NCBI RefSeq assembly: GCF_002113885.1
Contig: NW_018479988.1
Location: 129,176-193,175 of the forward strand
Reading direction: 5' to 3'
Length of the DNA stretch: 64,000 nucleotides
DNA from: Mizuhopecten yessoensis
Lineage: Eukaryota
The notes below the pieces were generated by a model. That model was not told where the DNA came from and did not search any database. It worked only from the letters and a program-made list of their open reading frames with translations. Numbering within the stretch: position 1 is the stretch's first letter; the number at the start of each line of letters is the position of its first letter. The translations under genes and the position numbers were made by a program. This document shows positions 11,725 through 39,060 of the stretch, in pieces.

Positions 11725-11783
11725 TATAAATAGCAGGTGGTCAAATGAGAGGTCATTCATTCGACCTCCTCTGCAGTGTCAAG
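11725..11783 (+). promoter_or_regulatory. TATA/Inr and non-coding exon 1 of copy 2
   Basis: TATAAATA 11725-11732, TCATTC (A at 11755), AAG|GTAAGT at 11783. Confidence 0.85.
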
Positions 11784-12231: not shown

Positions 12232-12940
12232 ATGAACAAGTCTCTGATGCTCGTTTTGATCCCCTGTCTGGTGGCTTACGTCATGGCCCAGTATTACCAG
12301 CCTGGATACGGTGGTATGGCTGGATACGGTGGTGGGTACGGGCCTGGAACCTACTACAACTACGCCGCGCAGAGCGCCCAAGGAGCCAAGACAAGCAATC
12401 TCCTGAACTATGGTAAGGATTTTATGGCATCTGTTTTGATTTCAAATATTCTACCATTCTACCGGTTTTTATAAAACGAAACATAAATATCTAGAGTAAT
12501 TTAAGGCGTATTTAACTATAAACTTTACAATCCATACACAAAAGTTAAACAGAAAAAGGATTTACCGATTTATTTATACGAAAAATTATAACTCCACCAT
12601 GCTTTCCGGTAAAAATTTACCGGTAATGATGTAAATGTTATTCATTAAAATGAATGCAAAAAATAGCCTTTTGTTAAAACTGTCACAATACGCACGGATA
12701 CATTATAAAGGCTAATTTTGCCTTAAAATGAAATGAGGGATGATTTAAACATGATCTTTTATAAAAAGTTATAAATGGCATCACATTACATAATGATATC
12801 AGCTTGACCAAAAAAGAGGTTTAAATTTACATTTACATAACACGATTACATTACTTTAAACACGAACGTCTTTTGCTCCAGGTCTTCTCTTCTTCGCCAT
12901 CCTCATCCTGACCAATGCCACTGGTAGTATCACTGGTTAA
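12232..12940 (+). CDS. Small secreted Gly/Tyr-rich protein, copy 2 (79 aa; join 12232..12412,12882..12940)
   Basis: Protein identical to copy 1; GT-AG introns; exon 3 ends 12987 (G|GTTAGT); exon 4 from 13402; AATAAA 13459-13464. Confidence 0.93.
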
Positions 12941-13876
12941 ACGTAGTTAACAGAAGCTGACATGCACCTTACACAAGAGATCAAATGGTTAGTCTTTTGA
13001 ACACTTGATATTGCTCTTGTTTGTTTATCCATTTATCATATGTGGCCCAACCTGACAAACCCAAACGAGAGTTTCTTTGTTTTTAAGCTGTAACATGTCT
13101 TTGGTTCCTTAAATACAGATTAGAAAATAAATATCAAAAAGATAGATTCTAATTTGTTGTATAACCTGCTGGATACAGGATAAAGGGGATTATAATTGTA
13201 AGTGGTGACACTATTCCAACGTATATTGGATCAACTTACATCAGATAGTCACGTTTAGTCACGCTTGAAACATTACGAAATAAGGCATGTAAGACGAAAC
13301 ACTAAAGAGAATACCCCGATTTTATTTTTTCCTATTTTGAATATAATTTGTCTTTATTTTGATAAATATATGTATTTATTTTATTTTTTCTATACTTTCA
13401 GAATTCCACAGACGACCTGTTATAGCTTATATTGCGCGATATATGTTGTGTTGCTATGAATAAAACTACCTTTATATAAAACTTGTTTACGATTTATTTG
13501 TCACTTCTGTTCTCATAGAAGTTATAATTGCGTCAGATACACTTTTTCACTACATTTCTGAAATAATAATTATTATTTATACAACCTTAAAGTAAAACAG
13601 GCAGAAGTATATACGCAAGCAACAACACACAGGGACCCAACACAAGGGAGGAATGGATTAAAATAACAAATCAAAAGAAAATCTATTGTACATCATAAAT
13701 TCCAACGAAGAATCAGAGGAGAAAACTTTGTTCTCTTTGTTCTGACTCAGAATCTATTTTCCAGCACAATATAGTAGTTCTATGATAATTCATTCCAATT
13801 TCATTTAATTTAAATGATTCGAAACCTTCTGTGGAAATATTTAAATCCAAAGTCTTGCTTCATTCCTTGTCAAGAC

Positions 13877-15057
13877 AGCAACTTAAAGATTTTTCATCTT
13901 ATATTCCTCCTTTCCCCCATCAACTATCAAATATTATTATTACTGAGCAAGAAGTATGTGACCAGCTCCATCTCATTTATGTAAAGAAGTCCCCAGGACC
14001 GGACTCAATTAACCCTAAATTTAGCAAAGGTGTATCTGAATCACTTGTTAAGCCTTTATATATTCTTTTTAATAAATCTCTGAAATCTGGCTATTTACCT
14101 CAAATCTGGAAAAATGCTAATGTTACTGCTATTTTTAAGAGCAAGGGGGTAAGGGGTGATCCATCTAATTACTGACCTATTTCTGTCACACCATTGTTTA
14201 GTAAAATGCTTGAAAAGATAGTTTTTAGATATCTATTCAATTATTTTTCAACAAATAACATAATTTTAAAAATCAATCTGCATTTCTGCCAAAAGACTCT
14301 ACAGTGATCCAGCTAATAAGAGTATATGATGCAATTCTTAAACAACTTAATATGAGAAAAGAAGCAAGACTATTTTTTGAGATATTAGTAAAGCATTTGA
14401 CATGGTTTGGCATGATGGACTTGTATATAAACTGAAAAAAGTATGGCATTAAAGATAATGTGCTTAACTGGCTCTTTAATTTCTTAATCGATAGGCAGCA
14501 ACGTGTAGTAATTGATGGATTTCGCTCTTCCTGGAAGACTTTATCAGCTGGGCTACCACAGGGCTCGGTCCTCGGTCTATATCTATTTCTTATTTATATA
14601 AATGATTTAGTAAATGAAATTCAGTCTAATGTCAAATCATTTTGCTGATGATACTTCATTATTTGTGCTAATAGGTAATGATAAAATAGCTGCTATCGAC
14701 ATTTTAAATAATGATTTTAATATAATATCTATGTAGGCAAATAGATGGGGTATACTTTTTAATCCCAACAAAACAGAAGCCCTTCTAATTTCAAACAAAC
14801 ATAATACTGATGGACTACATCCTGACCTTATATTCATTAACAACATTGTGGCAAACGTAAAAAAGCATATAGGTACTATTTAATGTTCCAACCCAGTGCT
14901 AATATGTTAATGTCTAAATTATAATTCTGCTATTGTTTGAAATGTATGTAACCCAAAGGAGAGGCCTTGTTAGGGCATAGTCTGTTGCCCAATTCCCATT
15001 AAATTACTTGATTTAATAAATTATTTTGAAATGAGAAAAATGAAAAAATGAAAAAAA
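13877..15057 (+). mobile_element. Degenerate 5'-truncated non-LTR retrotransposon (CR1/L2-clade reverse transcriptase)
   Basis: RT motifs in broken frames: KSPGPDSI, WKNANVTAIFK..G.R.DPSNY*PIS, DISKAFD.VWHDGL, G.PQGSVLG..LFLIYINDL, FADDT; stops and frameshifts; 3' tail with AATAAA and (AAAAATG)n at about 15013-15057. Confidence 0.9.
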
Positions 15058-15064
15058 CAGTAAT

Positions 15065-15563
15065 TCTCCTGAATAACTGATATTGCTTTGGTGTATTCTG
15101 AACGCTTGCTATATCTGTTGTTTATCCATTTACCATGTGTGACCCAACTTGACAAACCCAAACAAGAGTTTCTTTGTTTGTAAGGTGTAACATGTCTTTG
15201 TTTCCTAAAATACAGATTGGAAAATAAATATCCAAAAGATATATTCTAATTTGTTGTATAACCTGCTGGATACAGGATAAAGGGGATTATAATTGTAAGT
15301 GGCGACACTATTCCAACGTATATTGGATCAACTTACATCAGATAGTCACGTTTATTCACGCTTGAAACACTACGAAATAAAATGCAATGGGATAAGACGA
15401 AACACTAGAGAGAATATCCCGACTTTATTTGTTTTAATTTTGAATATGATTTGTCTTTATTTTGATAAATGTACTTATTTGATTTTTTCTATACTTTCAG
15501 AATTCCACAGACGACCTGTTATAGCTTATTTTGCGCGATATATTTTGTGTTGCTATGAATAAA
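15065..15563 (+). pseudogene. Orphan intron 3 plus terminal exon 4 of the Gly/Tyr-rich gene (no exons 1-3)
   Basis: Paralogous to about 12995-13464; intact acceptor tttcAG|AATTCCACAG at 15500/15501; AATAAA 15558-15563; starts right after the LINE tail. Confidence 0.8.
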
Positions 15564-18500
15564 ACTGCCTTTATATAAAAAAAAAATACGATTTATTTGT
15601 CACATTTTCACTACTCTCTGAAAGTAGCATAATTATTATGTATATAGTTTGTAAAACCTTAAAGTGAAACAGGCAGAAGTATATACGCCAGCAACAACAC
15701 ACGGGGACCCAATCAGAACAACTTGGAACTCATACTAAAAAGGGGGGGAACGAATTAAAATAACAAATCAAAAGAAAATCTATTGTACATCATAAACTCC
15801 AACAAAAGACAAGAGGAGAAAACTTGGGCCCGTATTAGATAAAGTGCCTCTATGTTCAGACTCAGAGTCTGTTCTCCAGCACAATTTCGTGTTTCTATGA
15901 CAATTCATTCAAATTTCCTTTTATTTAAATGATTCGAAAATTACTTTGGAAAGATTTTAATCCAAAGTCTCGTTTCATTCCTTGTCAAGACTTATTTTAC
16001 TTCAAGATCAGAATGTAGGCTTTATAACAGATCCCTTCGTTGAATACAGACGGGTGTATTCCGAAAAGAGTGACCTTCATATTTATTCCGTCAAAGTCAG
16101 CAATGTATGCAGGTAACTGACGTTCTGAGTTCATCAAAATGTATTAACAAATAGCATGAACGAGTAAAAGAACAATAATAAGAAAAATCAAATGCGTAAA
16201 AAAATAAAACAAAAAATGAAAATACCTTCGTTTAAAATATTCTTCTTGTACCTCTGTATATCAGATACAAGATGAACCTTCATAATACACATGGGACTGC
16301 AACTTAAAGAATTGGTTATAGATAAAGCATGCCAAAAATGAATTACACTGTATCATACAGCTGTTGCGTTCTTCTAGGACTGATCGGTGATGCTAGTGAC
16401 CGAAAAAAATGGTAACCTAAATTAATCTTAATAACCGTTGAAACAGAAGGAGGGGTGCATAAAATCCCTTAATTATGTGAATGTCAAACAATAGAGCAGT
16501 TCTGATCAATCTAATATAAATAAGAGTGTGCCACTTCTTAAAGGGAGATAACTGTGGTCATCACGGATACGGCAAACCTCGAGGACTAAGACATCCACCA
16601 ACAGATTCTATCATCTTTTATCTTGAAAAATAGACCACAGACACAAAAAAGTATCACTAGAAAACGAAGTAAACAAATGCCCAAATAAGAATGTCGACGC
16701 CAGAAGCCGATTGAATTAAGCATTTATTACACAATTTGGGCATTGTGTCAGTTTAAGATTATTCAGTCGAATGGACAAAAAAATATGATAAAACTTAAAA
16801 TAGTTAACAAACAAATGTAAGCATAAGGCAAACTTGGGGAGGTGTCTTTAAAGATCTAATCAATGTTATCAATAGCTATCAATTAAGTTATATTTTTTAT
16901 TATGTTTTATCTCAAAATGATAATGGTGTTCAAAGTAACAAACCCAGACATACCGATCCCTTATGTGTTACATCTATTCTTTGTGAAACAAAAACATACG
17001 TGAATGCAATTCACACATCTACTATAGGATAAAAGTCATTGCCTGAGACTGCGAAAGCCTTACAGTTCTCTAAATGAACATATATTGAAGAAAATTACCG
17101 CACCGTCCAAGAACTGCTCCAGTGGTGTAGTATTATTTTCTACAATAAAGCAAAACTAAAACACTTAGACAACTTCATAATTCAGTATAATCTATTAAGA
17201 TAACACTGAAACATCGTCCCTTGCTTTCAAAGATTAAATACTAAAAAGTTCTAAAATCTTAAAGATTCATACTTAATGAATAGCCATAACAACTTATAAG
17301 ATTTATATAATTGTTTGTATACGTTTGGCAATATTTTAAAGTGGTTTGAATATATGTGCTTGTTCGTGAGGTTACCGCTACTGTAGTTGTACATTTTATG
17401 ACGAACTGCCATCGGATATGATTGATTGATTCTTACGACTGTTACCTACGATAGCTGGATGTTCCAGTAACAAGGCGGCTATGTGCATTGATTGAGAAGA
17501 AGGGTTGCTTATTTGTATACCGCACTGTTATAATAAGTTGTCGACAGGTTTTACAGTGGTAGTACATAACACTGTGTGGTAGTAATTTGGAAATAGCAAA
17601 TATAATTTGTATGTTTGGATAATTGAAATTGACCATCGCCATTTACAAAATGGCGCAAACTGAGAATTATTTAATATTGTTTGTAACATGTTTTTGCATT
17701 GATTTGTGTTTACAGTATGTTAAGTGCTTAACTAATAAATTAAAAACGAATTTTTTCATAAGACACGAAATATTGTTTTTGTTTTCCAAATAAGTAGTCA
17801 TCTGTCATACTTGAATATTCGTCTGCAACCACGCCTTTTGATATTGATAATTCGAGCATTATACACGATTTAAGAACAGATAGCATGGAAATATTCCCGA
17901 CGACTAGCAAGGATCTATTAATGAATTATTTGAGAGAGTGGATGAAATGAGCATGTTGAAACCTCCTCCTCAGCTAGATCGGCGAATTATAGCACGCGCA
18001 CATGGTTATTAAAATTACTTCATTTATTGTAAATGAAAATGACACTCATTTTGTAAAACTATTTTTTTTCTTTCTAATATTTTAATGAAATCATAAGGAA
18101 TGGAGTGGATGATGAATCGGTGTACTTCGGTGTTCGGTTTATAACCCGATAAGAAATCTGATTTTATATTCTATAATGCTGCTCATCAATTATCAATATG
18201 AAAATAAAAATGGAGATTAACATATTATGGTTATATGCATAATAGAATCTTATCCATCCTGGATTCCCTGGCTTCCACTGCATACACTCATTCAGTTTGG
18301 TTATATTTATTCTATTTACTTCATGTATGTAGTAGGTGGTGGAAACGATCAACTAGTATTGAAACTAGTAATAATGATAAAGACAACAAAATTGCATAGT
18401 TGCCATGGCACTTGTTTTGTTTCCTTTTTCCACTGCACGTACTATAAAAGTGTATTATAAGATAATATATATATATATATCTAAAACATTGTTAGGACTG

Positions 18501-19495
18501 AGTTTTTCGTGATATCGGTTTCAGAATAAATTCTTGTTGCAACGTTACGATTGACTGATAGCCCTCTGGCCAGCAGGAAGTCGATTTGAATGGATAAATA
18601 CATTAATATTTGCTACACAATATGGTCATTTCGTTCATTTAGTGGAATCAAAACCAATAGGTATTCCGAAATATATTAAGAAACACAGCAAATGGGCGAA
18701 TGGTGCCATTGAACCCGTTTTAACCTAAAATATATTAATACGAAGGATTTTCATTTATAATTAAACCCCTAAAATAATCATTTTATGACTATGACGTAAA
18801 CGTAATAACGACATCAGAAATCCAGCCTTGACATTCATAGTTGATACGAATATCATCGATTTGGTCGATTTATGTAGTGAATAAGTCATTCAATGGTTAA
18901 GATATTGACTGTAAATACTAAATGAGTGTAGTTCAATGTTTAGGGAGTTCCTGTAGTCATACATTTTAACCGAGTAAAATGCAAAACCAACTTTTTGTCT
19001 ATTTTGGACGTCTTAAACAGGGGATGACGTTTTCATTGAAGTATGTTTTGTAAGTATGTTATGTGTAATGGTTATGAAAATGCAGGACAGTATTCAAAAT
19101 TTTAAAGAATAAATTGATTTAAAGATAGTAAGTTTTGCTGTCTTTGTAAGAAAGGTATATCTACAAAAATAGCTGTCTGGTGTTTGTTTTCATGCCATCA
19201 ACATAAACCGGTCTATAAGAGTCTCGCTCCTTTTCTCAATATCTCTCTTAAAGGTTCATAACTTTGCTCTTAGGTAACATTATGTCCTCTGCACAGTTGT
19301 ACAGAATATATTCCTTTACAAAATGAAATATATCTATTACACAATTTTTGGTTAGAAATGATAAAAAATCAACAAAAATATATCATGACTTCCTGGCAAT
19401 GTTCAGATACAATATTACACCACTACAGAAGGACTGATGACACGGAAGTGCTGAATGGTCAGACGGCTCCGGACACGTGGTATCATCCCGGTCAG

Positions 19496-19554
19496 TATAA
19501 ATAGCAGGTGGTCAACTGAGAGGTCATTCATTCGACCTCCTCTGCAGTGTCAAG
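19496..19554 (+). promoter_or_regulatory. TATA/Inr and non-coding exon 1 of copy 3
   Basis: TATAAATA 19496-19503, TCATTC (A at 19526), AAG|GTAAGT at 19554. Confidence 0.85.
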
Positions 19555-20004
19555 GTAAGTCAATCTATAAATGTTTTATTATGGGTTTTTTGTTTGAATT
19601 TATAACATCTAAAACATGTTTAGCTGTAAGACCGTTTTACTCAAGTTCGGAAACCAATGTAACTGTAAAACTTGACCTTATTGCGCTACAAGCATAGAAA
19701 TATTGGAATGTTCCATATATATATCTATACCAACTTCAATTGTCAAACTTTTACCAGTGGTTCGCTTACAAAATGTTTACTTCATATCCAATATGTGAAC
19801 ACATATTTGAGCTTGCCATTTGAAAACATTTTGATACATACTTAAAACAAATGACGAGATCAAAGACTATCAAAGATATTTTTGTAGAAAGTAAAATATA
19901 CTTTTTTTATACTTTCCTTTAAAGAGATAAAACAAATATATTGTGAAGAGTAAATATAACTCCATTGTTTATAGAATCCTCGCTTGCCCCGCCCACCAAT
20001 CACC

Positions 20005-20757
20005 ATGAACAAGTCTCTGATGCTCGTGTTGATCCCCTGCCTGGTGGCTTATGTCATGGCCCAGTATTACCAGCCTGGATACGGTGGTATGGCTGGATAC
20101 GGTGGTGGATATGGGCCTGGAACTTACTACAACTACGCCGCGCAGAGCGCCCAAGGAGCCAAGACTAGCAACTTGTTGAACTATGGTAAGTATTCCATGG
20201 CATCTGTTTAAATTTCAAACTATTCTACCAACACAGGTTTTACTTAACCAAAATATACATATCCGGTGAACTTTATAGTGGGTTTGATCAATAAACTGTA
20301 AATAATGACCTAATCCAAAACAATAAGTTCAATCCGGAATGTAATATATGTATGCAGTAAGTTAAACCGAAAAAGTATAACTAACCCAAGTATCCCGGAA
20401 AAGAGTTTTTTTCTAAATACTGTATTTGTCATTTGTGTAAATGAATGCAACAATCTGCGTTTCTGTCAATCTGTAACGATACACATGAATACATTATTAA
20501 TGTTTAAAATAACTACAATAATGCCCTAGAATGTAAATAAGGGAGGATTTAAACATGATCTTTAAAAAAACGTTCTCAATACCATTACATTATACCATGA
20601 TATCAACTTAACCACAAAAGGGGTAAAAAAAAATGGTTTAAATTTATATTTATATATCAGGATTACATTACCGTAAAAACGAATGTCTTTTGCTCCAGGT
20701 CTTCTCTTCTTCGCCATCCTCATCCTGACCAATGCCACTGGAAGTATCACTGGTTAA
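20005..20757 (+). CDS. Small secreted Gly/Tyr-rich protein, copy 3 (79 aa; join 20005..20185,20699..20757)
   Basis: Protein identical to copy 1; exon 3 ends 20804; exon 4 from 21268; AATAAA 21325-21330. Confidence 0.93.
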
Positions 20758-22500
20758 ACGTAGTTAACAGAAGCTGACATGCATCTTACACAAGAAATCA
20801 AATGGTAAGTCTTCTGAACACTTGATATTGCTCTTGTTTATTCTGAACGCTTGCTATAGTTGTTGTTTATCCATTTATCTAGTGCAGAAACTTGTTTCAT
20901 CCTGACATGCCTAAAAAGGGACTATCTTTGTAAGGTGGAACATTTTTTATTTTTTTAAAATATATATTAAGTATAAAGAAATATCCAAAAGATTCTGATA
21001 TGTTGTTAAACCTGTTGGATACAAGAAACAGGAGATTATTATTGTAAGTGGTGACGCTATTCTAACGTATCACGGATCAACTCATATCAGATAGTCGTGT
21101 TTATTCATGCTGGAAACACTACAAGATAAAACATGTAATGGAATAAGACAAATCACAAGGAAAAACATTTTATTTTCTTCAAGAATCATATCTATTTAAA
21201 TAGACCGTGAACTTGTGATTCTCTATTAAATAATTAAATGTTCTAATTCTATTTTTTATGCTTTCAGAATTCCACAGACGTCCTGTTATAGCTGATATTG
21301 CGCGATATATTTTGTGTTGCTATGAATAAAACTGTATTTACATAAAACTATTTTCGTTTTATTTGTCTTTTTTTTTTACTAGAAGTTATTTCTGTGTCAG
21401 ATACACTATTTCATAACAGCATTGACAGTAGCATGTATATAAAGTTTGTACAAATTTAATGTGAAATAGGCAAATGTAATTATGCCAGCAACAACACAGG
21501 AGAACCAAATCACAACAACTTGGATCTAATACTAAAAAAACGTTGAAGAACGGATAAATATAATTAAAGAAAATATATTGTACATCATAAACTCTAACAA
21601 GAGACCACAGGAGAAAACCCGGGCCTATATCAGGGAAACTGTCACTATGTTCAGACTCTGAGTCTGTTCTCCAGCACAATTTCTTTTTTCGTTGATAACT
21701 TATTCCAATTTTAATGAATTGAAAATGACTATGGATACATTTGAATCCAAACACTCGCTTCATTTATTGTCAAAATCTTCTTTGTGGTATGGTTTCAGCA
21801 AATTAAAGAAATTTAGGGACAGATCAGAATATAAGCTTTTGAAAAAAATGGCTTTGTTGAGTACAGGCGGATATATTATAAAAAGAGTGTCTTATGTGTT
21901 TCTCTCCTCCAAGTCAGGAAAGTCCGTAGGTTACTAACGTTCTGATTTATCATAATGTATAAACAAATGGCATGAACGAGTAACTTTTTTTACAAAATAT
22001 GTAAAAATAAAAACGAAAAATAAAAAAACCTTCGTTGAAACTAATGTTATCTTGTACGTCGGTATATTAGATACAAGATCAAACTCAGTCACACACATGG
22101 GACTGCAACTTCAAAATTTGGTAATAGTCTGATTCAGCACGCCAAAATGAACACTTTGCTGAACAGATGTGTCCCCTTCTAGGACTCATCGGTGATGCAA
22201 GGGACCTCAAAAAACTAAACTGGTCTAAAGTACTGTTGAAACAGAAGTAGAGGTGTATAAAACCTTGTCATTATATGATTTTCAAAAATTAGGGAGAAGT
22301 ACTATTTAATTTCGAATTATTAAGAATGTACCACTCCTCAAGGGGAAATAACTGTGGGCATCAAGGTTTACGGCATTCCTCGGGGACCAAGAAATCCACC
22401 AACAGAGTCTACCACTTTGTATATTGAAAGATGAACATAAAACACACAGATGGGACTGCACGTTTAAAATGTAGTAACAGATACAGCATGCCCAAAATGA

Positions 22501-22970
22501 ATTACACTGCATCATACAGATGTTTGGTCCTTCTAGGTCTCCACTAATTACACTGCATCATAGAGATGTTTGGTCCTTCTAGGGCTCGACTTATTACACT
22601 GCATCATACAGATGTTTGGTCCTTCTAGGACTCGACTAATTACACCGCATCATACAGATGTTTGGTCCTTCTAGGGCTCCACCGATTACACTACATCATA
22701 CAGATGTTTGGTCCTTCTAGGGCTCGACTTATTACACTGCATCATACAGATGTTTGGTCCTTCTAGGGCAGGACTAATTACACTGCATCATACAGATTTT
22801 TGGTCCTTCTAGGGCTCGACTAATTACACTGCATCATACAGATGTTTGGTCCTTCTAGGGCTCGACTAATTACAATGCATCATACAGATGTTTGGTCCTT
22901 CTAGGGCACGACTAATTACACTGCATCATACAGATGTTTGGTCCTTCTAGGGCTCGACTAATTACACCGC
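22501..22970. repeat. 46-bp minisatellite, 10 copies, derived from a hammerhead-relic motif
   Basis: Unit ATTACACTGCATCATACAGATGTTTGGTCCTTCTAGGGCTCGACTA; period 46 (22501, 22547 ... 22961). Confidence 0.95.
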
Positions 22971-25762: not shown

Positions 25763-25869
25763 AACGACAATGATATTTTCTGATGGATTTACTAGTTTTA
25801 TTTTGGAATTAACAGTTTTATGAAATTGGTTTCGATTTTAACAATGCCATAAGTTTAATTTCGCTTAAC

Positions 25870-28800
25870 GCATTGATATAAGTAAGTATTCGGATAAACA
25901 TTGTTATGAGTTAGTATTTTGTTAAACAATGCTATGAGTTAGTGTTTTGCTAAACAACGCTTTGAGTTAATATTCGGATAAACAATGATGTGAGTAAGTA
26001 TTTGATTAAACAACGCTATGAGTAAGTACTCGGATAAACAATGATGTGAGTTAGTTTTTTGTTAAACAACGCTATGAGTTAGCATTCGGATAAACAATGA
26101 TGTGAGTTAGTTTTAAGTTTAACAACGCTATGAGTTAGTATTCCGATAAACAATGATATGAGTAAGTTTTTGGTTAAACAACACTATGAGTTAGTATTCG
26201 GATAAACAAGGATGTGAGTTAGTTTTTGGTTAAACAACGCTATGAGTTAGTATTCGGATAAACAATAAACAATGATGTGAGTTAGTTTTTAGTTAAACAA
26301 CGCTATGAGTTAGTATTCTGATAAACAATGATGTGAGTTAGTTTTTGGTTAAACAACGCTATGAGTTAGTATTCGGATAAATAATGATGTGAGTTAGTTT
26401 TTGGTTAAACAACGCTACGAGTTAGTATTCGGATAAACAATGATGTGAGTTAGGTTTTAGTTAAACAACTCTATGAGTTAGTATTCGGATAAACAATGAT
26501 GTGAGTTAGGTTTTAGTTAAACAACTCTATGAGTTAGTATTCGGATAAACAATGATGTGAGTTAGTTTTTGGTTAAACAACGCTATGAGTTAGTATTCGG
26601 ATAAACAAGGATATGAGTTTGTTTTTGGTTAAACAACGCTATGAGTTAGTATTCGGATAAACAATTATGTGAGTTAGTTTTTGGTTAAACAACGCTATGA
26701 GTTAGTATTGGGATAAACAATGATGTGAGTTAGTTTTTGGTAAAACTACGCTATGAGTTAGTATTCCGATAAATAATGATGTGAGTTAGTTTTTGGTTAA
26801 ACAACGCTATGAGTTAGTATTCGGATAAACAATGATGTGAGTTAGGTTTTAGTTAAACAACTCTATGAGTTAGTATTCGGATAAACAATGATGTGAGTTA
26901 GTTTTTAGTGAAACAACGCTATGAGTTAGTATTCGGATAAACAATTATGTGAGTTAGTTTTTGGTTAAACAACGCTATGAGTTAGTATTCGGATAAACAA
27001 TTATGTGAGTTAGTTTTTGGTTAAACAGCGCTATGAGTTAGTATTCCGATAAATAATGATGTGAGTCAGTTTTTGGTTAAACAACGCTATGAGTTAGTAT
27101 TCCGATAAACAATGATGTGAGTTAGTTTTTGGTTAAACAACGCTACGAGTTAGTATTCGGATAAACAATGATGTGAGTTAGTTTTTTGTTAAACAACGCT
27201 ATGAGTTAGTATTCCGATAAACAATGATGTGAGTTGGTTTTTGGTTAAACAACGCTACGAGTTAGTATTCGGATAAACAATGATGTGAGTTCGTTTTTAG
27301 TTAAACAACGCTATGAGTTAGTATTCCGATAAAGAATGATGTGAGTTAGTTTTTGGTTAAACAACGCTACGAGTTAGTATTCGGATAAACAATGATGTGA
27401 GTTAGTTTTTTGTTAAACAACGCTATGAGTTAGTATTCGGATAAACAAGGATGTGAGTTAGTTTTTGGTTAAACAACACTATGAGTTAGTATTCGGATAA
27501 ACAAGAATGTGAGTTAGTTTTTGGTTAAACAACGCTTTGAGTAAGTATTCGGATAAACAATGATGTGAGTTAGTTTTTTGTTAAACAACGCTATGAGTTA
27601 GTATTCGGATAAACAATGATGTGAGTTTGTTTTTAGTTAAACAACGCTATGAGTTAGTATTCCGATAAATAATGATGTGAGTTATTTTTTTGTTAAACAA
27701 CGCTATGAGTTAGTATTCCGATAAACAATGATGTGAGTAAGGTTTTGGTTAAACAACACTATGAGTTAGTATTCCGATAAACAATGATGTGAGTTAGGTT
27801 TTGGTTAAACAACGCTATGACTTAGTTTTCGGATAAACAATGATGTGAGTTAGTTTTTGGTTAAACAGCGCTATGAGTTAGTATTCGGATAAACAATGAT
27901 GTGAGTAAGGTTTTGGTTAAACAACGCTATGAGTTAGTATTCGGATAAACAATGATGTGAGTTAGGATTTGGTTAAATAACGCTATGAGTTAGTATTCGG
28001 ATAAACAAGGATGTGAGTTAGTTTTTAGTTAAACAACGCTATGAGTTAGTATTCCGATAGATAATGATGTGAGTTAGTTTTTGGTTAAAAATCGCTATGA
28101 GTTAGCATTCGGATAAACAATGATGTGAGTTAGTTTTTGGTTAAACAACGCTATCAGTTAGTATTCTGATAAACAATGATGTGAGTTAGTTTTTGGTTAA
28201 ACAAAGCTTTGAGTTAGTATTCGGATAAACAATGATGTGAGTTAGTTTTTGGTTAAACAGCGCTATGAGTTAGTATTCGGATAAACAATGATGTGAGTTA
28301 GTTTTTAGTTAAACATCGCTATGAGTTAGTATTCGGATAAATAATGATGTGAGTTAGTTTTTGGTTAAACATCGCTATGAGTTAGCATTCGGATAAACAA
28401 GGATGTGAGTTAGTTTTTGGTTAAACTACGCTATCAGTTAGTATTCGGATAAACAATGATGTGAGTTAGTTTTTGGTTAACCAACGCTATGAGTTAGTAT
28501 TCGGATAAATAATGATGTGAGTTAGTTTTTGGTTAAACTACGCTATCAGTTAGTATTCGGATAAACAATGATGTGAGTTCGTTTTTAGTTAAGCAACGCT
28601 ATGAGTTAGTATTCGGATAAACAATGATATGAGTTAGTTTTTGGTTAAACAACGCTATGAGTTAGTATTCGGATAAACAATGATGTGAGTTAGTTTTTTG
28701 TTAAACTACGCTATGAGTTAGTATTCCGATAAATAATGATGGGAGTTAGTTTTTGGTTAAACTACGCTATGAGTTAGCATTCGGATAAACAATGATGTCC

Positions 28801-28990
28801 CCTAGTTTTTTGTTAAACTACGCTATGAGTTAGTATTCCGCTAAACAATGATGTGAGTAAGGTTTTGGTTAAACAACGCTATCTGTTAGTATTCTGATAA
28901 ACAATGATGTGAGTTAGTTTTGTGTTAAACTACGCTATGAGTTAGTATTCGGATAAACAATGATGTGAGTTAGTTTTTGGTTCAACAATG
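25870..28990. repeat. 56-bp satellite (dimer of two related 28-bp monomers), about 55 copies
   Basis: AAACAATGATGTGAGTTAGTTTTTGGTT alternating with AAACAACGCTATGAGTTAGTATTCGGAT over about 3.1 kb. Confidence 0.97.
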
Positions 28991-29627: not shown

Positions 29628-29686
29628 TATAAATAGCCCAGCTAGAAATCAACTCACCATTCACTTGTTTGCCCTAGCAGTGTAAG
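29628..29686 (+). promoter_or_regulatory. TATA/Inr and non-coding exon 1 of copy 4
   Basis: TATAAATA 29628-29635, CCATTC (A at 29659), GCAGTGTAAG|GTAAGT at 29686. Confidence 0.8.
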
Positions 29687-30053
29687 GTAAGTAAGATTTC
29701 ACTGCTCTACTTTCTATCTGTTTTTCTTCTGAAGCATCTTCATAATTTCGTCATCATGCACTATACAAACTTCACTAAGCATTTAACTATTTTGTATGAA
29801 TACTAGCACCTAACTATATTGTTATATCCTTAGAAGAAAAATACATCATTTTTACTCAAATGTAAAGTTTCAAACTTGCTCTAGTCTTGTGCCAGTCAGG
29901 GTTGCTTATCAAAAGCGTCGCGTTATTATTTATTTATTGTAGGACATGAGACCACAGCCAACAAGAACTCTTACCTCAATAGTGCTTAATTTCATAACCT
30001 AAACTATTCTAATAATATTTGTGGTTGTTACCAGAATCCGCCCACCAATCACC

Positions 30054-30694
30054 ATGAACAAGTCTCTGATGCTCGTGTTGATCCCCTGCCTGGTGGCTTA
30101 CGTTATGGCCCAGTATTACCAGCCTGGATACGGTGGTATGGCTGGATACGGTGGTGGGTACGGGGCTGGAACCTACTACAACTACGCCGCGCAGAGCGCC
30201 CAAGGAGCCAAGACAAGCAACTTGTTGAACTATGGTAAGGATTTGTATGTTCTTATATGTGCGCTCATTTTTACTGAATATGTATTTATTACCATTTTAT
30301 AATATTCAAAAATACAGCCGAAAAGTTGAAAAATTAAAAATTATGACTACATAAAAAAAAAAAAAAAAAACATGAGCTCCGCAAAAAAAAATTGTATTTA
30401 GAATAAACAGTTCTAGAAAAAACAATATATTTCAATAATGATGTTGTCGCTTAAAAAATGAATGCGAAAATAAAAGTAATATTCGTTCTGCTAACTGTTA
30501 CATATGCTGTATTTAAAACATCAAAAATAAGATATGAATTACGTTATTACCTTCATTTGACTTCCCCTATTTACTTTTGCCTCTATGCCTGAATTTGAGA
30601 AAGTGCGAGACTGATAACTAATGTTTTTGTTCCAGGCCTTCTCTTCTTCGCCATCCTCATCCTGACCAACGCTACCGGAAGTATCACTGGTTAG
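30054..30694 (+). CDS. Small secreted Gly/Tyr-rich protein, copy 4 (79 aa, P38A variant; join 30054..30234,30636..30694)
   Basis: Same exon structure; TAG stop; exon 3 ends 30746 (G|GTGAGT); exon 4 from 31175; AATAAA 31231-31236. Confidence 0.93.
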
Positions 30695-32699
30695 ACGTAG
30701 CCTCCCGATACTGACATGCTCCCCTCCCCGTACAAGTGATCAAATGGTGAGTCTTTTGAATGTTTGATTGATACAGCTTCTATTCATATATTAGAAAAAT
30801 GTGAAAATTTCATTTCATTATAATGTAACACTTCCTGGAAAATATTTTCCATTTTTCCTTTTTTCCATTTTTTAAACAACATAAAAGAAGCAGGCAGATA
30901 AATTGTTCTATTTGTTTTAAGCTACATTAATTTGATTATTAGTAAAGTTCACTGCATTATACATTTGAAAAGTATTCCGTTTTAGGTACCCTCTCAAACG
31001 TGTAATGGACTGACTACAGCCATCAAATTCTGGACAATATCAAGCTTTGATAAAGTTTAACAAAAAAACAACAAAATACAAATAAAAAACGATTTTTGCT
31101 ACTGTTTCTTTAGGCGTATGTTATGAATCAATTTAAAACGTGTTCTAATCACATCTTTTTTCTTGTTCTTTCAGAATTCCACAGACTTCCTGATACTGTC
31201 ATATTGCGTGAATCATAATATGTTGCTGAGAATAAAACTTAATTTATTATGTAAATATTTGAATTTTTATCTTTGCCTTCGCACAATGAAATCATTGGAA
31301 AGTTGTTTAGTGTAATGAATGCTACATCAATTTTACTTAAACATATGAAACTGTCTTCAGTTTAATTCAAACTGCAACTAAAATTGCTGAAAATGTAGAT
31401 AATTAAACAAATAAACGATACTGCTATATAAAAATTAGGCAATGTATATAAAAGGAATTTCTTACGCGAGTATATAAGCAAAGAAGTATCTTTATTTTTT
31501 AGTACAGTCATATATGCACATGGTGCAAGGTTAAGTAAAACAGAAAGGTTTACACCACTGAGTCAACACACCACAAGGACCTAAACAGGCGGTTGATGTT
31601 TGACTATCTGAACAGGCATGTTATAGATAAACATTGTGTATAAATAGCAGGATTATATACTATTTTTGTATAGTAAAATTCACACTCATTAAAGCGGTTT
31701 TTTTAGCGTATGGTGGAATGTTAACCGTTTAGTGCATTGATATATTGGCTTACCGTTTGTATATATAAAAACTTCAATTTGAACCACCATAATTGAGCGT
31801 AATATAAAAAACGCGAAAAGTGTTAATTTATAAGTTTATTAGAATACGTGCACCAGTAAAATAGGTACGCTTACAGCATAGCATATATTTGTAATGAAGG
31901 CAGAAAAATCTCGATCAAGGGTTAGAGTGCTTGTGCTTATCACAAATCTTCTCCCGGAGGTTGAGATTTGTCTGCCTTCATTACACAGGAATTAATGATT
32001 ACTTTCCCATACTTTCTTATGGTAAACCCAATACAACGCACTATCATCAATATGATGCTAAAGAGGAATGGCAATACTGTTGACGCGATCAGTGTGAAGT
32101 GGTGAGCTTTCTTCCCTGAAAAAGATACACGTTTCCCCACCTCAGCGTATACAAGATGAAAGTGACTCATGAGATACATATCCTAAAACGGACATTGTAT
32201 TCGCCGGAACAATACCTGACACCAACACACAGTTTAAATCTTGCACAACATCAAGGAAAAAAGGAGGGGGCGTGGGGGCGGGGGCAGCGATGGTTACCCT
32301 GTTGATGTCTCCTCAACTGGCTGGTTATTTCTAATGTCGATTAAGTTACTGTTTTCTATAAACGTCTAATGTATTGTCATCAGTATTTACTTTAATAATT
32401 CTACAGGACGTCTTATCTTGTGAACTGATAGATGTATTTACCGCGAGCATTTCCTTTACAGAAAACTTGCAGTTGGGAAGTATATAAGAAATTTATATTT
32501 TGTGAACATCATATGAAATAAAAATGTAAAATGTTAGGTGCTGAATATTATGTAAGGTTTCTAGTATACGTAAATTGTTAATTTACTGTCGGTTTAAGGA
32601 CTAATTTATATAATGTGCCAACTTAATAAGTGGGGTTTAAGTAAGGGACCGCAGAATTTATTAACTTTGCTCCAAACGAAACTACTAATGAATAATTTA

Positions 32700-36420: not shown

Positions 36421-37167
36421 AACTGTATACATTCTGTATGTCCTCGAATGGTTTTGACTCGCTTCATTCAGCAAGAGAGAGAAAATAATAAAAACATGTT
36501 TAAATAACAGTCCTCAAATCCGTACAAATCCTCAATAGTTCCTTAAAATCCCTCGATACTTTAGTAAAAATCATTGATGTTTTCAAAACACAAATCAGAA
36601 CTTCTAAAGGGGACAAATTAAGTCCTTAGAAACAGCAAAATTTAGTTTTGTAATTTCACTCCTATACCAATGCACTCATATACTTTTATTGGATAGCGTC
36701 GGTAGTGGAAGTTACAAGTATAATTAGTTTGTTTAAATATGAATATCTGAAATCATGTGCGAAGTTGGGATTAAAAAAAAAAAGGCTGACACCCACCTAA
36801 CATCCAATCTCCAATCAGGTTTTAATGCAGTAATGATACCATGAGCTACAATGGATCGTTTGACATAACTGTTATGAAGTTGGATTTTTGTTTTTCAATG
36901 AGACAAACCGAGAGTAAGCTATCTATATGTGCAAGTCCGAAATGTAATTTCAAACGTAAATGTGGACTAATAAGAAATCGGTGAATGTGCAGTTTTATTT
37001 TGGTGATTAGTTTTTTGACACTTGAGGCTACAGTTTGACTTTGATATTTTTTGTAAGCAATTGTTTTAAGGATATTTTATTGGTTTAATAGCTAATAAAT
37101 ACCGGGCACGTGTGTCATGGCGTGTCAAACGTTGCAATATTCAATTATTTTATATTTATGTTGGAAA

Positions 37168-37537
37168 TCTTATATTTGTATTCAATAATTGTAAATATAT
37201 GTGCAAAAATTTATATTTGTATTCAATAATTGTAAATACATGTGCAATAATTTATATTTGTATTCAATAATTGTAAATATTTGTGCAATATTTCATATTT
37301 GTATTCAGTAATTGTAAATATATGTGCAATAATTTATATTTGTTTTCAATAATTGTAAATGTATGTGCAATAATTTATATTTGTATTCAGTAATTGTAAA
37401 TAAATGTGCAATAATTTATATTTGTATTCAATAATTGTAAATATATGTGCAATATTTCATATTTGTATTTAATAATTGTAAATATATGTGCAATATTTTA
37501 TATTTGTATTCAATAATTGTAAATAAATGTTCAATAA
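37168..37537. repeat. 41-bp AT-rich minisatellite, about 9 copies
   Basis: Unit AATAATTTATATTTGTATTCAATAATTGTAAATATATGTGC. Confidence 0.92.
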
Positions 37538-37808
37538 AACAAATATGTATCAGCATTCTCAAGATGAAGACATAACATGAATAATGTTGTATATCAAATA
37601 TTTCAAATGTTTATAACGTGTTAAGTACCGACAAGCAGGATGACCCTTCAAAGAGCCGCCGACGTGTCGTGTCTAGTAGACGGCGCCGTCTTCCTGGTAC
37701 TGGTCACTGCAATGTTACGACACTTCGAGATCGGCTGAGCCGGACAAAAAGGAAGTGTTACCTGGTTAGTCGTAATAGCTCTGGACACGCAATGACCACC
37801 CTGGTCAA

Positions 37809-37868
37809 TATAAATAACCATCAGTTTCTCCGGAAGATCATTCTGGCTGTCTACCTCTGCAGTGTAAG
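37809..37868 (+). promoter_or_regulatory. TATA/Inr and non-coding exon 1 of copy 5
   Basis: TATAAATA 37809-37816, TCATTC (A at 37840), GCAGTGTAAG|GTAAGC at 37868. Confidence 0.8.
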
Positions 37869-38598
37869 GTAAGCATCGTGGTTACTGACTTATAGTGGTT
37901 TCAGAATTTTTTATTGTTGACATCCAACATTTTTTGAAATCGCTGCCTTCTTTATACGTTTCATATTTTACTTACATATATGTATTTAGTTTTCAACTCC
38001 CCTTGTTAATGTGCACATGAATTTTTCATAACTAAAATTCACTTAATTTTTCGTACGAATCACCTAACACAGCAATTGCATTTAAAAAATCAAAGACATC
38101 GTTGAAAAGGGAGTAGAATCTTTTCATTAAAGATGGTCATTTTATAAATGAAGGAATTCTTTTGGCTATATCAACTTGTACTGTGTCCCCGGTTTCCTAT
38201 ATGGTCCTCGCTAGTACCGGTAACTAATATACTAGGTGGAAGATTTATCGCTATCCTTGATTGACTTTGGTCAAACGCAATTATATTGAAAATGCATCGA
38301 TTGTTTATATACGTATTGGATGGTCAAGCTTTGAATTCAGGTCACATTAAGTTTTTATGTAAGTCCGGGATATTTAGGTAATTTACACCAATGAAATACA
38401 AAACATCGACGTTTTTGATTAAAAATATAGTCTAAAGCTAAATGAATTTCAATTGTATTCAGACATGCACAAGATAAGAGGCGATTCAGGTAAATTATTT
38501 ACCTTATGTCTACCTTGACATACACGTTTCTCCTCGTCCTTTTTTATTTATCGATATTTTCCTTGTAGAATCATCGCCCGCCCCGCCCACCTCTCACC

Positions 38599-39060
38599 AT
38601 GAACAAGTCTCTGATGCTCGTGTTGATCCCCTGCCTGGTGGCTTACGTCATGGCCCAGTATTACCAGCCTGGATACGGTGGTATGGCTGGATACGGTGGT
38701 GGGTACGGGCCTGGAACCTACTACAACTACGCCGCGCAGAGCGCCCAAGGAGCCAAGACAAGCAACTTGTTGAACTATGGTAAGCAAAAACACAACAGGA
38801 CAAGTTTGGCGTTGTATCCATTAGTTTTAACATTTCGTTTTCTTTGTATATTGCACATTTTACGCGTATTAGGATTTGATGGCCTATATCCATAACTGTT
38901 ATTACCTCATTAATCGTACACTACAGACCGGGCATTGTTATTGACGAGGTTGAATAGTCTGTTCTCACAAAACACGCTCAATATAAACTTACTTGTTCCA
39001 GGTCTTCTCTTCTTCGCCATCCTCATCCTGACCAATGCCACTGGTAGTATCACTGGTTAG
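38599..39060 (+). CDS. Small secreted Gly/Tyr-rich protein, copy 5 (79 aa; join 38599..38779,39002..39060)
   Basis: Protein identical to copy 1; TAG stop; exon 3 ends 39101; exon 4 from 39374; AATAAA 39454-39459. Confidence 0.93.

What the first reader, a model, noticed from the sequence alone, without database searches (positions are those of the whole stretch)
12232..39060. Exon-restricted homogenisation: coding exons nearly identical where introns are unalignable
Seen, by hand count over the 181-nt coding part of exon 2: copy 4 vs 5 differ at 2 sites and copy 1 vs 5 at 4 (all synonymous), although I could not align their introns or flanks. Copies 2 and 3 share a near-identical intron 1 and about 4 kb of upstream DNA, yet differ at 11 sites, all synonymous. 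Protein-level selection alone does not preserve synonymous sites. Inference: recurrent short-tract gene conversion confined to exons (concerted evolution), possibly plus codon or RNA-level constraint. The exons are also much more GC-rich than the surrounding DNA, consistent with GC-biased conversion or codon bias.
Basis: partly seen in the sequence, partly recalled or inferred. Interest (0 to 1): 0.7.

Follow-up and report, generated by a model that had tools for sequence, protein, structure and literature searches.

The report
Exon-limited gene conversion, scallop gene array
Six neighbouring copies of a tiny, very highly expressed secreted-protein gene in the Yesso scallop keep their coding exons almost identical, most likely by copying short patches of DNA from one another while their introns have drifted beyond recognition; this is a clean example of ordinary concerted evolution, not a new mechanism.

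Summary
The window is Mizuhopecten yessoensis DNA. It holds five tandem copies of a four-exon gene, and a sixth copy lies 11.6 kb upstream. The gene encodes a 79-aa protein: signal peptide, Gly/Tyr-rich middle, hydrophobic tail.

One of the two copy 4/5 differences is non-synonymous.

The conversion reading is largely supported, with corrections:
- **Copies 2 and 3.** Their 11 differences reflect an exchange breakpoint in or just after exon 2. Upstream DNA is about 94% identical, downstream 60-80%. Their exon-2 dS (0.30) equals intron divergence, so synonymous sites are not constrained.
- **Copies 4 and 5.** These are the real anomaly. Their introns carry no alignment signal (K at least about 0.7) and are single-copy. 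Yet exon-2 dS is 0.025 between them and 0.08-0.17 to the other copies. Copy 4's exon 3 and the UTR exons are diverged.
- **Sister cluster.** It shows 200-bp islands of 99.5-100% identity in unrelated flanks. One island includes about 40 nt of intron.
- **GC-rich exons.** Their GC3 matches the conventional actin genes, so biased conversion is not needed.
- **Reads.** RNA shows huge expression and confirms the private variants of copies 0 to 4.

This is a known kind of process. The scan made a similar finding (PPP1R15) elsewhere in this genome.

The parts
2960..3018 (+).
   Evidence: Alignment A4 and motif positions. The start site is inferred from copy c5.
3516..3726 (+). c1 exon 2: 30 nt of 5'UTR plus 181 nt of CDS, ATG at 3546, phase-1 donor
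4890..4994 (+). c1 exon 3: 56 nt of CDS, stop codon, then 3'UTR
5415..5480 (+). c1 exon 4: 3'UTR with AATAAA. The end is approximate.
11725..11783 (+). c2: TATA box and exon 1. The ATG at 11745 used by NCBI isoform X1 lies here.
12202..12412 (+). c2 exon 2, ATG at 12232. It carries a private cluster of four synonymous changes at CDS positions 168-172.
   Evidence: RNA reads with this cluster: about 7,900.
12882..12987 (+). c2 exon 3
13402..13470 (+). c2 exon 4 (end approximate). A second, duplicated copy of exon 4 lies at 15492-15567.
19496..19554 (+). c3: TATA box and exon 1
19975..20185 (+). c3 exon 2, ATG at 20005. The breakpoint of the c2/c3 exchange lies between about CDS +104 and intron +227.
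20699..20804 (+). c3 exon 3
21268..21335 (+). c3 exon 4 (end approximate)
29628..29686 (+). c4: TATA box and exon 1. It is homologous to c0-c3 but clearly diverged apart from a few kept motifs.
30035..30234 (+). c4 exon 2, ATG at 30054. The near-identity island runs from -16/-19 to about +195, which is about 10 nt into intron 2. The 5'UTR has an 11-nt deletion. Private changes: GTC to GTT, and Pro38Ala.
   Evidence: The Pro38Ala letter is seen in 10.5% of RNA reads.
30636..30746 (+). c4 exon 3. Its CDS is NOT homogenised (dS 0.31-0.54 to all other copies). Its 3'UTR part is 70-75% identical to c0-c3.
   Evidence: The c4-type UTR is seen in 7,855 RNA reads.
31175..31240 (+). c4 exon 4: 76-79% identical to c0-c3 (end approximate)
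37809..37868 (+). c5: TATA box at 37809 and exon 1 at 37845-37868
   Evidence: RNA read starts at 37845 and 37849, and the exon 1-2 joint..
38569..38779 (+). c5 exon 2, ATG at 38599. It equals the six-copy consensus at every coding site. Identity to the other copies ends at the splice donor.
39002..39101 (+). c5 exon 3. The CDS is c2-like (0 synonymous differences) but keeps the TAG stop shared with c4. The UTR part cannot be aligned to c0-c3.
   Evidence: Splice joints.
39374..39423 (+). c5 exon 4, with poly(A) sites at 39411, 39419 and 39423
   Evidence: joint 39101/39374 and read ends
8950..12412 (+). Young segment shared by c2 and c3 (c3 counterpart 16645-20185): about 94% identical from 3 kb upstream (88% further out), ending in exon 2

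Best explanation
This is a tandem array in the Yesso scallop. It has six assembled copies, five of them in the window. The gene has four exons and encodes a 79-aa protein: signal peptide, Gly/Tyr-rich middle, short hydrophobic tail. The family is uncharacterised, occurs in scallops and mussels, and is very highly expressed.

The array evolves by homologous exchange between copies. The 211-bp exon 2 acts as the island of homology where exchanges start or end.

**Two kinds of exchange are visible.**

1. Long exchanges, meaning unequal crossover or long-tract conversion, with one end at exon 2.
- Copies c2 and c3 share a young segment of more than 3 kb upstream that ends inside or just after exon 2.
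- Copies c0 and c1 share a young 3.2-kb segment that begins about 50 bp before exon 2.

2. Short non-crossover conversion tracts of about 60-220 bp that overwrite only a coding island, in copies whose introns are too diverged to pair.
- Exon 2 of c4 and c5.
- The coding part of exon 3 of c5.
- Exon 2 and exon 3 of dispersed copies in the sister cluster.

Protein-level purifying selection keeps the coding islands similar enough to remain substrates for pairing. That is why identity appears restricted to exons.

**Shown:** the identity pattern, the breakpoints, the contrast between synonymous and intron divergence, expression of all copies, and the lack of long-term synonymous constraint.

**Inferred:** the molecular mechanism (DNA-templated repair between paralogs), the direction of each event, and its timing.
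For: **Synonymous sites are not constrained in this gene.**
- c2 and c3 have exon-2 dS 0.30 against intron-2 divergence of about 0.30.
- Among c0-c3 the mean exon-2 dS is about 0.75 times intron K.
- Eleven differences are far too many for the young upstream segment (P = 2.7e-5).

**c4 and c5 are old copies with young exon 2.**
- Their introns carry no alignment signal.
- In my simulation that means K of about 0.7 or more.
- Their second introns are single-copy in the genome, so they are not transposon insertions.
- Exon-2 dS is 0.025 between c4 and c5 and 0.08-0.17 to the others.

**One gene pair shows two histories.**
- For c4-c5, exon-2 synonymous differences are 1 of 40 sites. Exon 3 has 5 of 16 (p = 0.0056). 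Exon 4 has 22 mismatches in 62 nt (p = 5e-5).
- c5 exon 3 matches c2, while c5 exon 2 does not.
- Six pairs of the six informative CDS sites show all four gametes.

**Breakpoints sit beside exon 2.** They lie at -78 for c0/c1 and between +104 and +227 for c2/c3. Both give permutation p <= 0.002.

**The sister cluster repeats the pattern.**
- L013 against L018 has a 201-bp island at 100% identity and nothing else alignable within 1.5 kb either side.
- L016 against L018 has islands at exon 2 and at exon 3, and the exon-3 island includes about 40 nt of intron.
- Copies with 92-99% identical flanks differ by 0-5 nt in exon 2. Most pairs differ by 4-5, which is more than between flank-unrelated copies.

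**There is no long-term sequence constraint.**
- Synonymous sites between subfamilies A and B are saturated (pS 0.75).
- Actin paralogs with the same GC3 reach dS from 0.2 to above 1.5.
- Exon-2 RNA folds no better than shuffles (z = +0.67).

**Paralogs group by species at the protein level.**
- Five M. yessoensis B copies are 98-100% identical.
- The two Ylistrum balloti B paralogs are identical to each other over the shared region.
- Between the two species identity is 85%.

**The pattern is not an assembly artefact.** The private exon-2 variants of c0-c4 listed appear in raw RNA reads at 10-17%. The c4-type and c5-type UTRs are spliced to this exon-2 pool. Independent DNA contigs join c5's flanks to its exon.
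Against: - No orthologous DNA from another scallop could be examined. The classic test, in which paralogs group by species in exons but by position in introns, was done only at the protein level and only for the sister subfamily.
- The numbers are small: 40 synonymous sites in exon 2 and 16 in exon 3.
- Differences from the consensus (3, 4, 6, 5, 2, 0) do not depart significantly from a star tree (p = 0.22). So the extra closeness of c4 and c5 beyond a single old homogenisation rests mainly on the flank contrast.
- The genes are extremely highly expressed and share the high GC3 of the conventional actins, so some codon-usage selection probably lowers dS as well.
- The reference is, from memory, a short-read assembly. 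Exact zero-difference counts inside a 200-bp repeat could in part reflect consensus gap filling.
- DNA depth and one unassigned RNA variant suggest copies that the assembly lacks.
Confidence: 0.72

Rival explanations
1. Selection only. The copies are old and never exchange sequence. Protein-level purifying selection, plus strong selection on codon usage or another mRNA-level feature in a hyper-expressed gene, keeps even synonymous sites nearly fixed.
For: - About 1.2% of all reads in an RNA run map to this roughly 400-nt transcript family.
- GC3 of 0.63-0.72 matches the conventional actins (0.55-0.71). GPCR genes average 0.49 and flanks are 0.31-0.42.
- Identity tracks the coding parts rather than whole exons.
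- Most changes away from the consensus go from G/C to A/T, as expected if G/C-ending codons are preferred.
Against: - c2-c3 have dS 0.30, equal to intron divergence, with no amino-acid change. A functional copy therefore tolerates free synonymous change.
- dS is unrelated to flank divergence. It is lowest for the pairs with the most diverged flanks.
- Exon 2 and exon 3 of the c4-c5 pair differ about 16-fold in dS.
- Synonymous sites between subfamilies are saturated.
- Actin paralogs with equal GC3 diverge freely.
- Exon-2 RNA shows no special structure.
- Orthologous proteins differ by 15% between scallop genera.
Confidence: 0.12
2. RNA-templated conversion. Reverse-transcribed mRNA of this very abundant transcript serves as the repair template, so only exon sequence is overwritten. 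This has been proposed for duplicated ribosomal-protein genes in fungi.
For: - Expression is extreme.
- Identity ends within a few bases of the splice sites in c5 and in L013.
- The fungal precedent and its argument are in bioRxiv 10.1101/751792.
Against: - The exon-3 island shared by L016 and L018 includes about 40 nt of intron 2 at about 97% identity.
- c4's identity runs 5 nt beyond the donor consensus into intron 2.
- The UTR parts of the mRNA (exon 1, the exon-3 UTR, exon 4) are not homogenised in c4 and c5, although a cDNA would carry them.
- No copy has lost an intron.
- Long exchanges that include kilobases of non-transcribed DNA occur in the same array.
Confidence: 0.07
3. Assembly artefact. 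A short-read assembler collapsed the roughly 200-bp repeated exon and pasted a consensus into each locus, which exaggerates identity.
For: - The genome has 82,659 contigs.
- c5 equals the consensus at every coding site.
- In an independent DNA run the consensus core contig has depth 98.7 against 11.3 for unique flanks. That is more than six copies with the assembled variants would give by my rough reckoning.
- One RNA variant (38631 C>A, 13%) is in no assembled copy.
Against: - The private exon-2 variants of c0-c4 listed are seen in raw RNA reads of another sample at 10-17%, and c5's private 5'UTR letters at about 18%.
- At a threshold of 5% of reads, the whole expressed exon-2 pool shows only 17 listed variable coding positions plus c2's four-base cluster (two further rows were not shown).
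- The c4-type and c5-type 3'UTRs are spliced to that same pool.
- Independent DNA contigs span c5's intron 1 into exon 2, and exon 2 into intron 2 and exon 3, with 0 mismatches.
- No N runs lie near the genes.
Confidence: 0.05

Closest known systems
Concerted evolution of tandem paralogs by interlocus (non-allelic) gene conversion and unequal crossing-over. Textbook cases, from my own knowledge, are the globin, growth-hormone, hsp70 and histone clusters. The mammalian gene pairs of PMC2720389 appeared in the listing and were not read.
   Same: - Coding identity is far above flank identity.
- dS is far below intron divergence.
- Histories along the gene are mosaic.
- Exchange breakpoints fall in the best-conserved segment.
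- Short tracts of about 60-220 bp fit the usual animal tract lengths (own knowledge).
   Different: The gene family is new to this literature: an uncharacterised ~80-aa secreted protein of scallops and mussels. The homology islands are single small exons. The pattern also links copies about 350 kb apart and on another scaffold.
Coding-only homogenisation of duplicated ribosomal-protein genes in fungi (bioRxiv 10.1101/751792, read)
   Same: Highly expressed duplicates whose dS is much lower than intron divergence, with diverged promoters and flanks.
   Different: There the donor is argued to be cDNA. Here intron bases are included in at least one island, the UTR exons are not homogenised and no intron is lost, so a genomic DNA donor fits better.
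PPP1R15 inverted paralogs in the same scallop genome (earlier scan finding s1-514833)
   Same: Same genome and same signature: coding blocks 99-100% identical with diverged introns and flanks, read as gene conversion.
   Different: That case is one inverted pair of a regulatory gene. This one is a six-copy direct array plus a sister cluster of a structural or secretory gene. I did not re-test that finding.
Mussel foot protein 3 (Pfam PF04202, Mfp-3)
   Same: A small secreted Gly/Tyr-rich bivalve protein encoded by a multi-copy family. The weak Pfam match covers residues 6-52.
   Different: The score is 17.8 bits, below the curated 22-bit cut-off. The conserved hydrophobic C-terminal exon with its N-x-T-G motif is, as far as I recall, no part of Mfp-3. 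Membership is not supported.

Membership tests
Interlocus gene conversion / concerted evolution | Paralogous coding sequence is much more alike than the flanking and intron sequence of the same copies | tested here: met
   Exon-2 CDS is 94-99% identical among all six copies. Introns of c4 and c5 align at the level of shuffled sequence. Sister cluster: 201-202-bp islands at 99.5-100% identity in unalignable flanks.
Interlocus gene conversion / concerted evolution | Synonymous divergence is far below neutral divergence of the same pair, while synonymous sites are shown to be otherwise free | tested here: met
   c4-c5 exon-2 dS is 0.025, and c4/c5 to the other copies 0.08-0.17, against intron K of at least about 0.7. 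Control: c2-c3 dS 0.30 equals intron K 0.30.
Interlocus gene conversion / concerted evolution | Mosaic or incongruent histories along the gene (breakpoints, four-gamete violations) | tested here: met
   Max-chi-square breakpoints at -78 (c0/c1) and between +104 and +227 (c2/c3), p <= 0.002. dS in exon 2 and exon 3 disagrees for c4-c5 and for c2-c5. Six four-gamete site pairs.
Interlocus gene conversion / concerted evolution | Paralogs group by species rather than by orthologous position | tested here: inconclusive
   Tested at the protein level only, for subfamily B. M. yessoensis copies are 98-100% alike, the two Ylistrum balloti copies are identical to each other, and between species identity is 85%. 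No orthologous DNA or flanks were available.
Interlocus gene conversion / concerted evolution | Tracts significant in GENECONV or RDP | not tested
   Those programs are not installed. My own max-chi-square and Fisher tests were used instead.
cDNA (mRNA)-templated gene conversion | Identity stops exactly at exon borders and covers the whole mRNA, UTRs included | tested here: not met
   The exon-3 island of L016/L018 includes about 40 nt of intron. Exon 1, the exon-3 UTR and exon 4 of c4 and c5 are diverged.
cDNA (mRNA)-templated gene conversion | Occasional precise intron loss in converted copies | tested here: not met
   Intron 2 is located in all six copies and intron 3 in all six. Intron 1 was located in c1-c5. 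All located introns sit at the same positions.
Selection on codon usage alone | dS is uniformly low across exons and pairs, and scales with flank divergence | tested here: not met
   Exon-2 dS ranges from 0.025 to 0.30 and is lowest where flanks are most diverged. Exon-3 dS reaches 0.54. Synonymous sites between subfamilies A and B are saturated.
GC-biased gene conversion as the cause of GC-rich exons | GC3 is above that of comparably expressed genes that are not being converted | tested here: not met
   GC3 of 0.63-0.72 lies within the range of the conventional actins (0.55-0.71). GPCR genes average 0.49 and flanks are 0.31-0.42. Changes from the consensus run mostly from G/C to A/T.
Mfp-3 (PF04202) | Score reaches the Pfam gathering threshold | tested here: not met
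   17.8 bits against a 22-bit cut-off, for exon 2 of c5. The two other subfamilies tested gave no hit.

The most novel reading that the evidence does not exclude
Homogenisation in this family may be coupled to its extreme transcription. Breaks or R-loops in the hyper-expressed coding islands would be repaired from any paralog, or sometimes from transcript-derived templates. That would let copies about 350 kb apart, or on other scaffolds, stay 100% identical over one 200-bp exon, and would make exon 2 a true recombination hotspot rather than merely the longest stretch of homology.
Probability: 0.1. Interest if true: 0.6.

Novelty: new member of a known kind. Interest (0 to 1): 0.3.

Why it matters
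- **A compact worked example.** One locus shows how a tandem array evolves. It carries its own neutral control (copies 2 and 3), copies with old flanks and young exons (copies 4 and 5), and breakpoints that map to a single 211-bp exon.
- **A warning for dating duplications.** Paralog dS values in this bivalve genome cannot be used to date duplications. A second case (PPP1R15) was already noted in the same genome.
- **A new family to study.** The work points to an uncharacterised ~80-aa secreted-protein family, found in scallops and mussels, that takes about 1% of RNA reads in at least one sample.
- **Annotation fixes.** The 102-aa isoform and the "SecG" name attached to these genes are not supported.

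Tried and rejected
**Explanations tested and rejected**
- *RNA-structure constraint.* Exon 2 folds no better than shuffles (z = +0.67).
- *Functional antisense or alternative-frame ORF over exon 2.* Such ORFs exist in all copies. Changes that are synonymous in the sense frame alter their amino acids, so they are by-products of the GC-rich codons.
- *Transposon replacement of the c4 and c5 introns.* Both second introns are single-copy in the genome.
- *GC-biased conversion as the cause of GC-rich exons.* GC3 matches the conventional actins.

**Searches that gave little or nothing**
- *Pfam.* Only a sub-threshold Mfp-3 hit.
- *Protein atlas.* Best score 0.79, uninformative.
- *Cross-species DNA.*
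  - The scan with P0002 found nothing.
  - Runs labelled as two other organisms (X16, X17) carry the c5 transcript, including its 3'UTR, at about 100% identity. They are the same or a very close species and are no distant-species test.
- *Literature on the gene identifiers.* No papers found.
- *The Chlamys farreri genome paper.* It does not mention this family.

Protein searches used exon 2 by reference, or the database proteins P0002 and P0003.

Full report
**What is there**

The window is G000:C76661:129176-193175 of a 988-Mb genome in 82,659 contigs. Exon 2's peptide matches "uncharacterized protein LOC110441983" of Mizuhopecten yessoensis at 100%.

Self-comparison finds five copies of a roughly 220-bp block in the window, with ATGs at 3546, 12232, 20005, 30054 and 38599. 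A sixth copy, c0, lies 11.6 kb upstream of the window on the same contig.

Each copy is a complete four-exon gene:
- a TATA box and a short non-coding exon 1;
- exon 2, with about 30 nt of 5'UTR and 181 nt of CDS, ending in phase 1;
- exon 3, with 56 nt of CDS, the stop codon and some 3'UTR;
- exon 4, which is 3'UTR with AATAAA.

The product is 79 aa: a signal peptide, a Gly/Tyr-rich middle, and a short hydrophobic stretch followed by an N-x-T-G-type tail.

Raw RNA reads confirm every splice joint of c5, its start sites (37845 and 37849) and its poly(A) sites (39411-39423). Expression is extreme: exon-2 depth is about 80,000-fold, and about 1.2% of all reads read from the run map here.

Over the 181 coding bases of exon 2 the differences are c4-c5 = 2, c1-c5 = 4 and c2-c3 = 11, exactly as reported. 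One correction: one of the two c4-c5 differences is Pro38Ala in c4.

Introns 2 and 3 of c4 and c5 align to every other copy no better than shuffled sequence (z from -1.4 to 2.7). Copy c5 equals the six-copy consensus at every coding site of exon 2. The other copies differ from the consensus at 3, 4, 6, 5 and 2 sites.

**The puzzle of copies 2 and 3 is a breakpoint**

- c2 and c3 show 5.7% mismatch from 3 kb upstream to just past exon 2. Identity then falls to 54-84% in intron 2.
- A max-chi-square scan puts the change between CDS +104 and intron +227 (p <= 0.002).
- Eleven synonymous differences are far too many for the young segment (P = 2.7e-5). They are just what the old segment predicts: dS 0.30 against intron-2 K of about 0.30.
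- In mirror image, c0 and c1 are about 92.5% identical from -90 to +3.2 kb but only 66-72% identical upstream. Their break is at -78 (p <= 0.002).

So the array has grown or been reshuffled by long exchanges whose ends fall at exon 2. That exon is the longest well-conserved stretch in the unit.

This has an important consequence. Synonymous sites of a fully functional copy pair (no amino-acid change) have drifted at the intron rate. Among c0-c3 as a whole, exon-2 dS averages about 0.75 times intron divergence. No exon-specific homogenisation is needed for those four copies.

**The real anomaly is c4 and c5**

These are old paralogs:
- Their promoter and exon 1 are homologous to those of c0-c3 but clearly diverged. 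A few motifs are kept, including the TATA box and the exon-1 donor (alignment A4).
- The 3'UTR part of exon 3 is 70-75% identical to c0-c3 in c4 and cannot be aligned in c5.
- Exon 4 is 76-82% identical to c0-c3 and 64.5% between c4 and c5.
- Their introns carry no alignment signal, which in my simulation means K of about 0.7 or more.
- Their second introns are single-copy in the genome, so they are not transposon insertions.

Yet exon-2 dS is 0.025 between c4 and c5 and 0.08-0.17 to c0-c3. That is lower than among c0-c3 themselves.

The same pair gives a very different answer in the next exon. For c4-c5, exon 3 has 5 synonymous differences in 16 sites, against 1 in 40 in exon 2 (p = 0.0056). 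Exon 4 has 22 mismatches in 62 nt (p = 5e-5).

The coding part of c5's exon 3 matches c2 (0 synonymous differences) but keeps the TAG stop that it shares with c4. That bounds a tract of at most about 60 bp. Six pairs of the six informative coding sites show all four gametes.

**The pattern repeats in a sister cluster**

A search of the whole genome with the exon-2 peptide finds a second subfamily (B, 67% amino-acid identity) on contigs C5386 and C1654, and more distant members on C5563.

| Pair in subfamily B | What aligns |
|---|---|
| L013 vs L018 | One 201-bp block at 100%, nothing else within 1.5 kb either side |
| L016 vs L018 | Exon-2 island, 202 bp at 99.5%; exon-3 island, 149 bp at 97% |
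| Copies with 92-99% identical flanks | 0-5 nt apart in exon 2, most pairs 4-5 |

L013 lies about 350 kb from the main cluster and L016 is on another scaffold. The exon-3 island of L016/L018 includes about 40 nt of intron 2. Exon similarity is again uncoupled from flank similarity.

**Selection alone does not fit**

- Between subfamilies A and B the conserved signal-peptide codons are saturated at synonymous sites (pS 0.75).
- Actin paralogs with the same GC3 reach dS from 0.2 to above 1.5.
- Exon-2 RNA has no unusual fold (z = +0.67).
- The antisense and alternative-frame ORFs over exon 2 are not conserved between copies.

The full library search shows the family in Ylistrum balloti, Mytilus edulis and M. 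galloprovincialis, always uncharacterised. The five M. yessoensis B copies are 98-100% identical in protein. The two adjacent Ylistrum B paralogs are identical to each other over the shared region. Between the two species identity is only 85%. An A-like protein from a metagenome is 69% identical to A.

So the protein itself is not frozen, and paralogs look alike within each species. This is the classical signature of concerted evolution. I could test it only at the protein level, because no orthologous DNA was reachable.

**GC content**

GC3 of the family is 0.63-0.72. It is 0.55-0.71 in nine conventional actin genes and about 0.49 in 18 GPCR genes. Flanking DNA is 0.31-0.42.

GC-rich exons are therefore a general coding and expression effect in this genome. 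Changes away from the consensus run mostly from G/C to A/T. GC-biased conversion is not needed, though it is not excluded.

**Donor type**

The literature offers a close analogue: duplicated fungal ribosomal-protein genes with coding-only homogenisation, ascribed there to cDNA donors (bioRxiv 10.1101/751792). Four things here point to genomic DNA donors instead:
- intron bases inside the L016/L018 island, and 5 nt beyond the donor consensus in c4;
- UTR exons that are not homogenised;
- no intron loss in any copy;
- kilobase exchanges of untranscribed DNA in the same array.

**Is it an assembly artefact?**

In raw RNA reads of a 2026 run, the private exon-2 variants of c0-c4 listed appear at 10-17%, and c5's private 5'UTR letters at about 18%. 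The c4-type and c5-type 3'UTRs are spliced to the same low-diversity exon-2 pool. That pool has 17 listed variable coding positions at 5% of reads or more, plus c2's four-base cluster; two further rows were not shown.

Contigs of an independent 2025 DNA run join c5's unique flanks to exon 2 with no mismatch. There are no N runs near the genes.

Two loose ends remain. One RNA variant (38631 C>A, 13%) is in no assembled copy. The DNA depth of the consensus core suggests more copies than the six assembled.

**Limits**

- The numbers of synonymous sites are small.
- The position-orthology test across species could not be run.
- Exact zero-difference counts in a short-read assembly deserve confirmation with long reads.

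**Verdict**

It is refined for copies 2 and 3, which reflect a breakpoint; for the exon restriction, which is really coding islands of homology alongside long exchanges that include non-coding DNA; and for GC content, which is codon bias. This is a new member of a well-known kind of process. The scan already noted a similar case (PPP1R15) elsewhere in this genome.

Noticed in passing
G000:C76661:117578-117758 (L008:1501-1681), 11.6 kb upstream of the window: A sixth gene copy (c0). Its DNA beyond about -650 is unrelated to the other units, so it looks like the first member of the array.
   Followed up: yes
window 38631; exon 2 at 38569-38779: RNA reads show a synonymous variant (38631 C>A) at 13% that no assembled copy carries. 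In an independent DNA run the consensus core contig has depth 98.7 against 11.3 for unique flanks. At least one more copy or allele probably exists than was assembled.
   Followed up: partly
window 11745-11783: NCBI isoform X1 (102 aa) starts at an ATG present only in c2; c0, c1 and c3 have CTG there. By analogy with c5's mapped start sites, this ATG lies between the TATA box (11725) and the expected transcription start (about 11761). The 23-aa extension is probably an annotation artefact. UniRef's 'SecG' name for the 79-aa model is also unsupported.
   Followed up: partly
G000:C5386 (about 323-376 kb and 729 kb), C1654:168512, C5563:511-554 kb (loci L013-L025): Further subfamilies of the same gene family (67%, 51% and 39% amino-acid identity), some in head-to-head or tail-to-tail pairs. 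One is a pseudogene with in-frame stops (L021). Homologs occur in Ylistrum balloti and Mytilus species, all uncharacterised.
   Followed up: partly
window 25905-28988: A 56-bp satellite with about 55 copies (91% matches) and very strong GC skew (+0.4), lying between c3 and c4.
   Followed up: no
window 22500-22967; 37170-37537; 43944-45037; 47626-48333; 51848-53755; 55808-56112: Six more tandem-repeat arrays, with periods of 46, 41, 26, 38, 71 and 43 bp. The 41-bp array sits just upstream of the c5 promoter. The 71-bp array is the one noted in earlier finding s1-517245.
   Followed up: no
window 13831-14648 and 12992-13876 / 15093-15991: A LINE-type reverse-transcriptase fragment downstream of c2. 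It is bracketed by an 80%-identical local duplication that created a second, orphan copy of exon 4 at 15492-15567.
   Followed up: no
window 4003-4091 and 4537-4624: An 89-bp inverted repeat (91% identical) inside the roughly 630-bp insertion that makes c1's intron 2 longer than c0's. It looks like a MITE-type element.
   Followed up: no
window 38626-39473, runs X16 and X17: Runs labelled as two other organisms hold c5 transcripts, including its private 3'UTR, at about 100% identity. They share the 39076 G>C polymorphism with 22% of the scallop RNA reads. This suggests the same or a very close species, a hybrid, or carried-over scallop RNA.
   Followed up: no
window 12196-12381 (-), 19969-20154 (-), 30009-20203 region (-), 38548-38793 (-): A 61-81-aa antisense ORF spans exon 2 in every copy. 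Its amino acids change wherever the sense strand has a synonymous change, so it is a by-product of the stop-poor GC-rich codons.
   Followed up: yes
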